Below are positions 13,466 to 45,468 of a stretch of DNA of 64,000 nt, piece after piece. The translations under genes and the position numbers were made by a program. The DNA is from Saccostrea cucullata (lineage: Eukaryota). The first letter of the stretch is position 1. Each line of letters begins with the position of its first letter. Under the pieces are notes generated by a model. It saw nothing but the letters and a program-made list of their open reading frames with translations. It was not told the DNA's origin and made no database searches. The DNA lies in assembly GCF_032062105.1 (NCBI RefSeq), contig NW_026935306.1:1-64000 (forward strand), in the 5' to 3' direction.

Positions 13466-14162
13466 TCATGTACCTGCATGTACCTGGACTTCATTATTGA
13501 CTACTGCTTGAGACTCCTTTACTTCATCATTGACTTCTGCTTGAGACTCCTTTACGTCATCATTTCCTTCTGCTTGAGACTCCTTTACTTCATCATTGAC
13601 TTCTGCTTGAGACTCCTTTACTTCATCATTGACTTCTGCTTGAGACTCCTTTACTTCATCATTGACTTCTGCTTGAGACTCCTTTACTTCATCATTGACT
13701 TCTGCTTGAGACTCCTTTACTTCATCATTGACTTCTGCTTGAGACTCCTTTACTTCATCATTGACTTCTGCTTGAGACTCCTTTACTTCATCATTGACTT
13801 CTGCTTTAGACTTACGTTCAATGCTATCATCGATCAACTCTACGTAACGGTTAATATTCGTGTAACTTGCATTAACACTTTCGTTTGTGGTATGTAAGAC
13901 CTCCAGATATGAACCATCTGCATTATTAGGAATAATGTAGGATCCGCCCCTAACTTGTTCCTTGTCATTCAGAGATTCACGTTCTTCTCTTTGTTCACGC
14001 AGATGATCATAATTTTCGTCTTGTTCTTCAATCATTTCATAATCAGGTTCATTGTAGGGATTATTTGATGAGGTAAAATTTGATTCATATAGACTATTTG
14101 TTGTCTTTGGAACATTTGGAAGGCGCATTAAATCTTTCCTTCTCTTTCGCAAAAGCATTTTC
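13466..14162 (-). CDS. Gene A exon 18, cytoplasmic tail with ITAM, further Tyr motifs and acidic repeats
   Basis: cacag|G in phase 2; [47 protein letters not shown]..([11 protein letters not shown])x10. Confidence 0.85.
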
Positions 14163-45400: not shown

Positions 45401-45468
45401 AACATGAAAAATGTACTACCTGATACAAAGAAAAGTAAGTTCCCAATCAGCCAAAAATAAGACATCAT
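13466..45468 (-). CDS. Gene A: 18-exon type I membrane receptor (SP-[kringle-6Cys-6Cys-linkers]-S/T stalk-[kringle-6Cys-6Cys-linkers]-TM-ITAM tail); N-terminal unit frameshifted
   Basis: GT-AG exons with compatible phases: 45420-45468, 44005-44240, 33765-33852, 33543-33685, 31662-31771, 30387-30529, 29477-29515, 29016-29072, 27474-27650, 27173-27391, 23088-23175, 22516-22658, 22115-22232, 20755-20897, 20470-20508, 17510-17566, 17336-17402, 13466-14162. Paired exons have matching lengths (88/88, 143/143, 143/143, 39/39, 57/57). Whether this is one gene or two tandem genes needs RNA evidence. Confidence 0.75.
13484..13813 (-). repeat. Coding 33-bp minisatellite, 10 units ([11 protein letters not shown])
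   Basis: + strand unit ttgacttctgcttgagactcctttacttcatca; central units identical. Confidence 0.95.
14740..15160. mobile_element. Partial Helentron-like element with Cg170-type unit and (ACG)n
   Basis: Similar to 18160-18510; gacgac microsatellite; ends tgagctaaaa. Confidence 0.7.
16725..17245. repeat. Old inverted-repeat element (~90-bp degenerate arms)
   Basis: 16730-16820 is reverse-complementary to 17150-17240 (ORF track echoes [10 protein letters not shown] / [10 protein letters not shown]). Confidence 0.65.
17336..17402 (-). CDS. Gene A exon 17, transmembrane helix
   Basis: tttcag|[22 protein letters not shown]|gtatg; phase 2 joins basic stop-transfer [10 protein letters not shown]. 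Confidence 0.85.
17510..17566 (-). CDS. Gene A exon 16, juxtamembrane linker
   Basis: [19 protein letters not shown], 57 nt, phase 1-1. Confidence 0.8.
17583..18510. mobile_element. Complete non-autonomous Helentron-like (CvA/HINE-type) element with ~4 x 166-bp Cg170-like repeats
   Basis: Starts aacaagaggccc..gctcacctgag; unit ggggtcatgatttgaacaaacttgaatctacac at ~17664/17830/17996/18163; gacagac tract; end gctcacttgagcctttggctcaggtgagctaaaa. Confidence 0.85.
18680..20039 (+). mobile_element. Full-length Tc1/mariner transposon, transposase pseudogene
   Basis: TIR cagtgcagtgccataagtgtttc / gaaacacttatggcacggcactg, TA TSD; [28 protein letters not shown]; stops and frameshifts. Confidence 0.93.
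20470..20508 (-). CDS. Gene A exon 15 (39 nt)
   Basis: [13 protein letters not shown], phase 1-1. Confidence 0.8.
20755..20897 (-). CDS. Gene A exon 14, 6-Cys module 4, second half
   Basis: [47 protein letters not shown]|gtaag; 143 nt. Confidence 0.85.
22115..22232 (-). CDS. Gene A exon 13, 6-Cys module 4, first half
   Basis: [39 protein letters not shown]; 118 nt, phase 1-2. Confidence 0.85.
22516..22658 (-). CDS. Gene A exon 12, 6-Cys module 3, second half
   Basis: [47 protein letters not shown]|gtgag; 143 nt. Confidence 0.85.
23088..23175 (-). CDS. Gene A exon 11, 6-Cys module 3, first half
   Basis: [28 protein letters not shown]; AG/GT flanked, 88 nt. Confidence 0.85.
23650..24500 (-). 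mobile_element. Penelope-like (Naiad-type) retroelement fragment, RT 5' part fused to 3' end
   Basis: [47 protein letters not shown]; internal deletion; SINE tail (attg)n at ~23590-23650. Confidence 0.85.
25930..27050 (+). mobile_element. Penelope-like (Naiad-type) RT C-terminal fragment with 3' end, spanning a gap
   Basis: [39 protein letters not shown] remnants; conserved 3' motif at ~26900-26990. Confidence 0.8.
25986..26123. other. Assembly gap
   Basis: Run of N. Confidence 1.
27173..27391 (-). CDS. Gene A exon 10, kringle domain 2 (intact)
   Basis: [51 protein letters not shown]; six Cys, 219 nt, phase 1-1. Confidence 0.95.
27474..27650 (-). CDS. Gene A exon 9, Ser/Thr/Pro-rich stalk
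   Basis: [39 protein letters not shown]..; internal SPEHP repeat; phase-1 donor at 27474 (or 27468). Confidence 0.7.
29016..29072 (-). CDS. Gene A exon 8 (57-nt linker)
   Basis: ccttag|[19 protein letters not shown]|gtaag; paralog 17510-17566. Confidence 0.8.
29477..29515 (-). CDS. Gene A exon 7 (39 nt)
   Basis: ttttcag|[13 protein letters not shown]|gtattt; paralog 20470-20508 [13 protein letters not shown]. Confidence 0.8.
30387..30529 (-). CDS. Gene A exon 6, 6-Cys module 2, second half
   Basis: [47 protein letters not shown]|gtaag; 143 nt; paralog 20755-20897. Confidence 0.85.
31662..31771 (-). CDS. Gene A exon 5, 6-Cys module 2, first half (+1 insertion)
   Basis: [22 protein letters not shown] then +1 base; the ancestral frame would read [14 protein letters not shown], matching paralog 22115-22232. 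Confidence 0.8.
33056..33232 (-). mobile_element. SINE 3' half (same family as 372-718)
   Basis: (attg)n tail + tgtttaacgtccc..gctcggcactt..gacacgggacctc; shorter tail fragment at ~31160-31203. Confidence 0.75.
33543..33685 (-). CDS. Gene A exon 4, 6-Cys module 1, second half
   Basis: [47 protein letters not shown]; 143 nt, phase 2-1; paralog 22516-22658. Confidence 0.85.
33765..33852 (-). CDS. Gene A exon 3, 6-Cys module 1, first half
   Basis: tttcag|..[28 protein letters not shown]|gtaag; paralogous to 23088-23175 and 2708-2792. Confidence 0.85.
35057..36049 (+). pseudogene. gag: Gypsy gag with CCHC knuckle
   Basis: ATG 35057, in-frame TAA at 35162-35164; [14 protein letters not shown]; GGAAAAC putative slippery site near 36029. 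Confidence 0.85.
36049..39678 (+). pseudogene. pol: Gypsy pol (protease, RT, RNase H, integrase), disrupted
   Basis: LVDTGS; FLDD; ETDAS; HDNLGH..CKRCERC; IDF/SDQG/ERFNR; TAG at 36391, frameshifts near 36630 and 38195; 3' end deleted. Confidence 0.93.
42850..43880. repeat. Degenerate Helentron-like element with tgaccttga-rich tandem units
   Basis: Repeated tgaccttgaagtttgacc / ttgaccataactttt motifs; ends ggaagacctactcgttg..ctctagtt. Confidence 0.55.
44005..44240 (-). pseudogene. Gene A exon 2, kringle domain 1 with 1-bp deletion
   Basis: [69 protein letters not shown] then TGA (44014-44016); 236 nt vs 237 nt for paralog exon 2932-3168. Confidence 0.9.
45420..45468 (-). CDS. Gene A exon 1, signal peptide
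   Basis: [20 protein letters not shown]|gtagta, phase 1; joins GKSTQTDC of the kringle exon; homologous to the paralog exon at 6327-6360. Confidence 0.75.

What the first reader, a model, noticed from the sequence alone, without database searches (positions are those of the whole stretch)
13466..45468. Kringle + six-cysteine-module type I receptor with an ITAM tail: candidate undescribed bivalve immune receptor family
Seen: 18 phase-compatible exons giving SP-K-C6-C6-stalk-K-C6-C6-TM-tail, with a paralog ~7 kb downstream. Known: membrane kringle proteins I know of (Kremen: kringle-WSC-CUB; ROR/MuSK: Fz-kringle-kinase; PIK3IP1) do not have this architecture, and there is no protease or kinase domain here. 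Inference: a tandemly expanding, non-catalytic recognition receptor that signals through SH2 proteins, like Draper/MEGF10.
Basis: partly seen in the sequence, partly recalled or inferred. Interest (0 to 1): 0.9.

Follow-up and report, generated by a model that had tools for sequence, protein, structure and literature searches.

The report
Oyster kringle receptor family with ITAM
This is one member of an unstudied, expanded family of oyster cell-surface receptors that combine a kringle domain and an unclassified cysteine-rich helical domain outside the cell with an immune-type activation motif (ITAM) inside, so it probably turns binding of an unknown ligand into Syk-type signalling.

Summary
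The gene is real (minus strand, 18 exons, 45468-13466; Saccostrea cucullata, RefSeq LOC134242470, 'uncharacterized'): signal peptide, kringle, two six-cysteine modules, Ser/Thr stalk, kringle, two more modules, TM, tyrosine-rich tail. Correction: as assembled, two exons of the first unit are out of frame (about 44018 and 31703). Public RNA lacks the 31703 base and very probably the other lesion, and splices unit 1 to unit 2. The doubled ectodomain is this gene's peculiarity; the family standard is one kringle, one module pair, TM, tail. About 30-45 loci in this assembly (haplotigs and broken copies included); relatives found only in S. echinata and Ostrea edulis, none named or published in the searched library. 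The ITAM-like Yxx[IVM]-x6-YxxL is kept in 19 of 20 tails. The module folds all-helical (pLDDT 85-88) with no Pfam or PDB match; DUF19 is only a lead. Most likely a non-catalytic recognition receptor signalling through Src/Syk; ligand, tissue and immune role are untested. Continuity across the N gap and splicing to TM/tail were not read-tested. Earlier scan notes on this stretch agree; none found it on other DNA with certainty.

The parts
45420..45468 (-). Exon 1, start codon and hydrophobic signal-peptide-like leader (16 codons, phase 1)
   Evidence: homologous first exons in paralogs and RefSeq models. SignalP not available
44005..44240 (-). Exon 2, kringle 1; one base short near 44018, giving TGA at 44016-44014 before the sixth Cys
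   Evidence: an RNA contig matching this kringle has no gap (record 10)
34585..39967 (+). Gypsy-type LTR retrotransposon in intron 2, LTRs of 289 nt 100% identical (recent); not part of the protein
   Evidence: absent from the related copy on contig C12358
33765..33852 (-). Exon 3, first half of six-Cys module 1
33543..33685 (-). Exon 4, second half of module 1 (143 nt)
31662..31771 (-). Exon 5, first half of module 2; one extra base at 31703 shifts the frame
   Evidence: base absent in RNA runs X15 and X6 and DNA run X5
30387..30529 (-). Exon 6, second half of module 2 (143 nt)
   Evidence: exon 5-6 and 6-7 joints in X6
29477..29515 (-). Exon 7, linker with the family SEF motif
29016..29072 (-). 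Exon 8, short stalk, homologous in position and length to exon 16
   Evidence: exon 7-8 joint in X15, X16, X6
27474..27650 (-). Exon 9, Ser/Thr/Pro-rich stalk; in paralogs such exons precede the kringle
   Evidence: linked to exon 7 through about 57 nt and to exon 10 in RNA
27173..27391 (-). Exon 10, kringle 2, intact
25986..26123 (.). Assembly gap inside intron 10, flanked by high-copy repeats; not filled
23088..23175 (-). Exon 11, first half of module 3
22516..22658 (-). Exon 12, second half of module 3
22115..22232 (-). Exon 13, first half of module 4
20755..20897 (-). Exon 14, second half of module 4
20470..20508 (-). Exon 15, SEF linker
17510..17566 (-). Exon 16, juxtamembrane stalk
17336..17402 (-). 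Exon 17, single transmembrane helix without charged residues
13466..14162 (-). Exon 18, cytoplasmic tail: basic stop-transfer, eight tyrosines, acidic repeat, stop
14000..14041 (-). ITAM, YxxI-x6-YxxL, 35 residues into the tail
13488..13812 (-). 33-nt coding tandem repeat, 9.8 copies, acidic 11-residue unit; not seen in paralog tails
835..6360 (-). Downstream paralog (5' part): leader 6360-6327, Ser/Thr exon 3582-3472, kringle 3168-2932, module exons 2792-2708 and 977-835; runs off the contig; RefSeq XP_062580543 'plasminogen-like, partial'

Best explanation
A single-pass, non-catalytic surface receptor of an oyster-specific (Saccostrea, Ostrea) tandemly expanded family. Basic unit: signal peptide, optional mucin-like stalk, one kringle, a pair of disulfide-stapled helical six-Cys modules, TM, tyrosine-rich tail. 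This gene carries an old internal duplication of the ectodomain (about 870 aa). Shown: architecture, family, motif conservation, splicing of exons 5-10. Inferred: the conserved kringle gives a constant binding or docking site (its DREEPW/RWE surface resembles the weak lysine-binding site of plasminogen kringle 2), the faster-diverging module pair gives paralog-specific ligand contacts; ligand-driven clustering lets a Src-family kinase phosphorylate the ITAM, which recruits a tandem-SH2 Syk/Shark kinase, while the YxxP and YxN tyrosines dock Nck/Crk- and Grb2-type adaptors. Most likely output: activation of haemocytes or epithelia (phagocytosis, ERK) on meeting microbes or damaged cells. The two 1-nt lesions in unit 1 are most likely assembly errors or a private allele.
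For: Exon model and phases; kringle; compact paralogs with kringle-module-module-TM-tail in order on eight fetched loci; 33 close kringle, 36 module-1, 30 module-2 and about 47 tail hits in the genome; full-length RefSeq models in three species, several with multiple isoforms; ITAM tyrosines, His-Leu and 6-residue spacer invariant while the tail is only 50-65% identical, present in 19 of 20 tails at 33-36 residues; purifying selection in all regions, strongest on the kringle (dN/dS 0.15-0.30 kringle, 0.27-0.56 modules); RNA joints and missing frameshift; confident all-alpha models; 45 SH2 hits in the genome; oyster CgIgR recruits CgSyk through an ITAM (PMC6994640).
Against: No ligand, tissue, induction or phosphorylation data. 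Raw RNA depth over the exons is very low in two whole runs (0-2 reads deep). No dN/dS above 1 in any region (region averages only). Many paralogs have Val or Met instead of Ile/Leu in the first half of the motif. No homolog was found in Crassostrea/Magallana, where the ITAM-Syk work was done. Exon 10-11 and 16-17-18 joints were not read-tested.
Confidence: 0.55

Rival explanations
1. Same receptor and same phosphotyrosine signalling, but the job is not antimicrobial: cell-cell recognition in development, nerve or gamete contact, allorecognition, or clearance of dying cells (Draper-like), with the helical modules binding an endogenous protein.
For: Membrane kringle proteins known to me (Kremen, ROR/MuSK) are developmental; two family members weakly hit the RGM N-terminal domain (E 0.13); purifying, not positive, selection; low expression in the two raw RNA runs; ITAM-bearing tandem families also serve allorecognition in Hydractinia (PMC9546547).
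Against: Birth-and-death pattern: tandem clusters, species-specific clades, broken copies, domain loss and duplication, ITAM-less paralogs and isoforms is typical of immune families; no structural match to RGM.
Confidence: 0.3
2. The family is functional but this particular allele is dead or truncated: both frameshifts are real in the sequenced animal, and a recent Gypsy insertion sits in intron 2.
For: Two 1-nt lesions; LTR element with identical LTRs; RefSeq did not correct them and starts its model at an ATG at 31723 without a signal peptide; a related copy on C12358 is broken at several places; several paralog exons carry stops.
Against: The 31703 base is missing in three independent runs, one an RNA contig 98-99% identical to the window; a kringle-1-like RNA contig has no gap; all 24 module cysteines are kept; the assembly is fragmented (23,869 contigs).
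Confidence: 0.25
3. The tail tyrosines are mainly YxxPhi sorting/endocytosis signals of a scavenging or uptake receptor, not a Syk-binding ITAM.
For: Eight to eleven tyrosines per tail, many in Yxx-hydrophobic context; first half-site often YxxV.
Against: Fixed 6-residue acidic spacer and fixed distance from the membrane across three species, which sorting signals do not need; acidic context suits Src-family phosphorylation (established knowledge).
Confidence: 0.1
4. The 18 exons are two neighbouring genes or a misjoin at the N gap, not one transcript.
For: Standard family members have one unit; exon 8 mirrors the pre-TM exon and exon 9 the post-leader exon; gap flanks are repeats and could not be shown collinear.
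Against: An RNA contig joins exon 7 to exon 9 through about 57 nt; no TM, tail or leader exon between exons 8 and 9; the two module pairs, which lie on opposite sides of the gap, are sisters in the tree (94/93); gap-free contig C12358 holds unit-1 and unit-2 exons in the same order within 3.1 kb; RefSeq joins exons 10-11.
Confidence: 0.05

Closest known systems
CgIgR and other ITAM/hemITAM receptors of Pacific oyster (PMC6994640); Draper/CED-1/MEGF10
   Same: Type I, non-catalytic, ITAM in the tail; CgIgR recruits CgSyk and drives ERK and phagocytosis
   Different: Ectodomain is Ig (CgIgR) or EMI/EGF (Draper, own knowledge), not kringle plus helical six-Cys modules; no sequence relationship found
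Hydractinia Alr family (PMC9546547)
   Same: Clustered, expanding single-pass receptors with genes and pseudogenes, some with ITAMs, some without
   Different: Ig/Fn3 ectodomains, unrelated; Alr tails are too diverse to align, here the tail and ITAM are the conserved part
Membrane kringle proteins: Kremen, ROR1/2 and MuSK, PIK3IP1
   Same: Single-pass proteins with an extracellular kringle (ROR kringles hit at E 1e-14 to 1e-17)
   Different: No WSC, CUB, Frizzled, Ig or kinase domain here (Pfam finds only kringle); those are single-copy and, to my knowledge, lack an ITAM
Plasminogen / HGF / prothrombin kringles (RefSeq names partial models 'plasminogen-like' or 'HGF-like')
   Same: Kringle sequence, closest in motif to plasminogen kringle 2
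   Different: No PAN or protease domain; membrane-anchored; the names come from the kringle alone
DUF19 (PF01579, T20D4.11-like) and CPG4 domains of nematodes
   Same: Top language-model feature hit for two different members (0.81); similar size (157 positions against about 165 aa); 12 cysteines and extracellular (own knowledge); DUF19 genes are expanded and 14 of 51 are infection-induced in C. elegans (PMC3534327)
   Different: No HMM match in 23 sequences at E up to 10; score 0.81 is within chance range; C. elegans DUF19 proteins are small and mostly secreted

Membership tests
ITAM-bearing receptors | Cytoplasmic Yxx[IL]-x6..9-Yxx[IL] after a single TM | tested here: met
   Strict match at 14041-14000; relaxed form in 19 of 20 family tails
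ITAM-bearing receptors | Motif conserved beyond its surroundings | tested here: met
   Both Tyr, His-Leu and spacer invariant in 13 tails of 49-66% identity; also in O. edulis
ITAM-bearing receptors | Phosphorylation and binding of tandem-SH2 Syk/ZAP70/Shark | not testable with these tools
   Needs experiment; SH2 genes are present but Syk was not singled out
Kringle domain (PF00051) | HMM score over the curated cut-off, six Cys | tested here: met
   69 bits against 34.3 for both; kringle 1 lacks its sixth Cys as assembled
Kremen | Kringle-WSC-CUB ectodomain | tested here: not met
   No WSC or CUB in full-length members
ROR/MuSK | Frizzled CRD and intracellular kinase | tested here: not met
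Plasminogen/HGF family | PAN domain and C-terminal trypsin-like domain, secreted | tested here: not met
Draper/CED-1/MEGF10 | EMI and multiple EGF-like repeats | tested here: not met
   No EGF or EMI hit; modules are all-helical
DUF19 (PF01579) | Pfam HMM match | tested here: not met
   None in 23 members at E up to 10; six-frame genome scan blank but uninformative
DUF19 (PF01579) | Same fold and disulfide pattern | tested here: inconclusive
   Feature hit 0.81 twice; no DUF19 row in the Atlas shape search; no DUF19 sequence or model could be fetched for direct comparison
RGM N-terminal domain / neuritin-like three-helix six-Cys modules | Sequence or structural match | tested here: inconclusive
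   Pfam RGM_N E 0.13 in 2 of 23; no RGM chain among fold matches
Insect odorant/pheromone-binding proteins | Six-helix, 120-140 aa fold | tested here: not met

The most novel reading that the evidence does not exclude
The six-Cys module is a new extracellular recognition fold (or the first receptor use of a DUF19-like fold), and the family is a paired receptor system of flat and rock oysters: ITAM-bearing activators plus ITAM-less paralogs and tail-less splice forms as decoys, with variable modules that discriminate parasites or non-self, absent from Crassostrea.
Probability: 0.2. Interest if true: 0.85.

Novelty: new variant of a known kind. Interest (0 to 1): 0.62.

Why it matters
ITAM-Syk signalling is known in oysters from very few receptors, all with familiar Ig or lectin ectodomains. 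Here is a family of tens of genes with an invariant ITAM, a domain combination not found in Pfam or the searched literature, and an ectodomain module with no classified fold. It gives concrete, testable candidates for recognition receptors in farmed rock and flat oysters, a way to ask how often animals have attached new ligand-binding domains to the ITAM module, and a new small disulfide-rich domain for structure determination. It also shows that RefSeq names ('plasminogen-like', 'HGF-like') hide the family.

Full report
Identity and gene model. The window is an unplaced 64-kb contig of Saccostrea cucullata: a database protein identical to my exons 6-18 is RefSeq XP_062580541/2, LOC134242470, 'uncharacterized', on a 64,063-base contig. 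On the minus strand I rebuilt 18 exons with GT-AG borders from ATG 45468 to stop 13466: leader; kringle 1; modules 1 and 2 (each split over a phase 1-2 exon and a 143-nt phase 2-1 exon); two short linker exons; a Ser/Thr/Pro stalk; kringle 2; modules 3 and 4; two linkers; TM; tail. Both kringles pass the Pfam cut-off. No protease, kinase, EGF, CUB, WSC or Ig domain occurs in any full-length member. A paralog starts 7.1 kb downstream. Introns hold a recent Gypsy element (34585-39967, identical LTRs), a Tc1-like piece and other repeats.

With the splice sites that every paralog uses, exon 2 is 236 nt, one short, and reads into TGA at 44016-44014 before the sixth kringle cysteine; exon 5 has one extra base at 31703 and leaves the frame before its third cysteine. 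Alternative sites could keep a frame but would each drop a conserved cysteine. RefSeq starts its model at an ATG at 31723 in the shifted frame, without a leader. The single read-laying run (27100-33000) shows the 31703 base missing in RNA run X15 (2 of 2 reads), in an X6 contig that differs from the window at only three other letters over about 210, and in DNA run X5. An X6 contig laid on kringle 2 with 32 differences, no gap and four extra matching bases at its 5' end has exactly the profile expected of kringle 1 with the missing base present (32 mismatches plus one gap; other paralogs differ at 50-60 positions). This second point is indirect. The related copy on contig C12358 also has the base. 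So other animals carry an intact first unit; the lesions are assembly errors or a private allele. X6 is 'RNA' by the tool's guess, but its contigs skip introns. The runs' species are coded; exon identity is 97-99%.

One transcript, and the gap. RNA joints were seen for exons 5-6, 6-7, 7-8 (three runs) and 9-10 (two runs), and one contig links exon 7 to exon 9 through about 57 nt, the length of exon 8; that contig is 88% alike in exon 9, so it may be an allele or close paralog. No TM, tail or leader exon lies between exons 8 and 9. The N gap lies in intron 10, over 1 kb from any exon, between high-copy repeats; I could not show the flanks collinear and did not fill it. Indirect support for continuity: phases match, kringle is followed by the module exon in every paralog, RefSeq joins them, the module pairs on either side of the gap are sisters (94/93), and gap-free contig C12358 has unit-1 and unit-2 exons in order within 3.1 kb. 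Joints to TM and tail were not read-tested here; they rest on RefSeq models in three species, several with four to five isoforms.

The family. In this assembly: 33 kringle exons at 63% identity or more, 36 module-1 exons, about 30 module-2 exons and about 47 tails, mostly on the same contigs and often in tandem. Haplotigs and broken copies are included, so the haploid gene count is lower. Eight fetched loci show the standard single unit: kringle, module pair, linker, TM, tail (the TM exon was picked up in six). Ser/Thr exons normally sit between leader and kringle, so this gene is an old internal duplication (module pairs about 50% identical, kringles 86% at DNA level). Database searches found relatives only in S. 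cucullata, S. echinata and Ostrea edulis; O. edulis members form their own clade and include an independent duplication of the module pair and a kringle-less isoform. No Crassostrea/Magallana hit appeared, but the searches were short-profile or word-limited, so absence is not shown.

The six-Cys module. Spacing C-x13..18-C-x10..16-C-x8-C-x12-C-x26-C holds for both members of the pair; profile comparison supports their common origin weakly (E 0.002), as does the shared exon layout. AlphaFold gives confident all-helical models (pair pLDDT 85, single 88), from shallow alignments. No Pfam, PDB-sequence or fold match was found. Leads only: DUF19/CPG4 by language-model features (0.81 twice, within chance range), RGM N-terminal domain (E 0.13), and the C-x8-C helix of pheromone-binding proteins. 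I put a remote DUF19-like origin at about 40%.

The tail. A strict ITAM sits 35 residues in; 2.3% of shuffles of this tail contain one. More telling, both tyrosines, the closing His-Leu and the 6-residue acidic spacer are invariant in 13 genomic tails of 49-66% identity, and 19 of 20 database tails, O. edulis included, keep it at 33-36 residues. YxxP and YxN tyrosines are also kept. One paralog has lost the ITAM and most tyrosines, and two RefSeq isoforms end soon after the TM. The TM has no charged residue, so no adaptor chain is needed. All regions show dN/dS below 1, lowest in the kringle (simple counting on small groups).

Mechanism. Shown: a non-catalytic single-pass receptor with a conserved ITAM and a birth-and-death gene family. 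Established: in Pacific oyster an Ig receptor uses its ITAM to recruit Syk and drive ERK and phagocytosis (PMC6994640); ITAM-bearing clustered receptors also occur in a cnidarian histocompatibility complex (PMC9546547). Inferred: ligand binding clusters the receptor, Src-family kinases phosphorylate the tail, Syk/Shark and adaptors dock. The kringle motif aligns best in detail with plasminogen kringle 2, whose site binds lysine-like groups weakly (own knowledge); the more variable modules are the likelier specificity domains. I rate phosphotyrosine/ITAM signalling at about 0.8, an immune-recognition role at about 0.55.

Verdict. Real and, within the searched library, undescribed. It works like known ITAM receptors but is not a member of Draper, Kremen, ROR or plasminogen families. 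The joined spliced model was left out of all search tools; exons were searched by reference.

Noticed in passing
window 60391-60729 (-): Terminal exon of a rhamnose/galactose-binding SUEL lectin domain (Pfam PF02140, E 5e-22), 15 kb upstream of the receptor on the same strand; a separate gene ending in a stop.
   Followed up: partly
window 34585-39967 (+): Gypsy-type LTR retrotransposon with gag, RT, RNase H and integrase pieces in several frames and 100% identical LTRs; described only.
   Followed up: partly
window 49942-53009 (-): LINE element with endonuclease and reverse transcriptase, broken into several frames.
   Followed up: partly
window 18921-19319 (+): Tc1/mariner-like transposase fragment in intron 15.
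   Followed up: partly
L002 (G000:C12358:37465-40599): Broken relative of this gene, 84-90% identical: kringle-1 end joined to module 1 without the Gypsy element, then a jump from the middle of exon 4 to unit 2; has its own frameshifts and a stop.
   Followed up: partly
P0014/P0043 (LOC134256764), P0033, P0042: A paralog that lost the ITAM and most tail tyrosines, and two RefSeq isoforms with TM but almost no tail: possible decoys.
   Followed up: partly
window 13488-13812: Coding 33-nt tandem repeat (9.8 copies, 96% alike) giving an acidic 11-residue repeat; probably length-polymorphic.
   Followed up: no
G000:C12851:163920-169927 (+): Three spaced weak hits to the module-2 exon profile (E 0.04-0.12): possibly a more distant gene with repeated six-Cys modules.
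   Followed up: no
window 47842-49518 (+), 55743-57600, 8535-10244 (+), 23896-24684 (-): Further degenerate ORFs that look like transposon remnants; the four tested have no Pfam hit.
   Followed up: no
window 6858-7010: Second assembly gap, between the gene and its downstream paralog, so the 7-kb spacing is an estimate.
   Followed up: no
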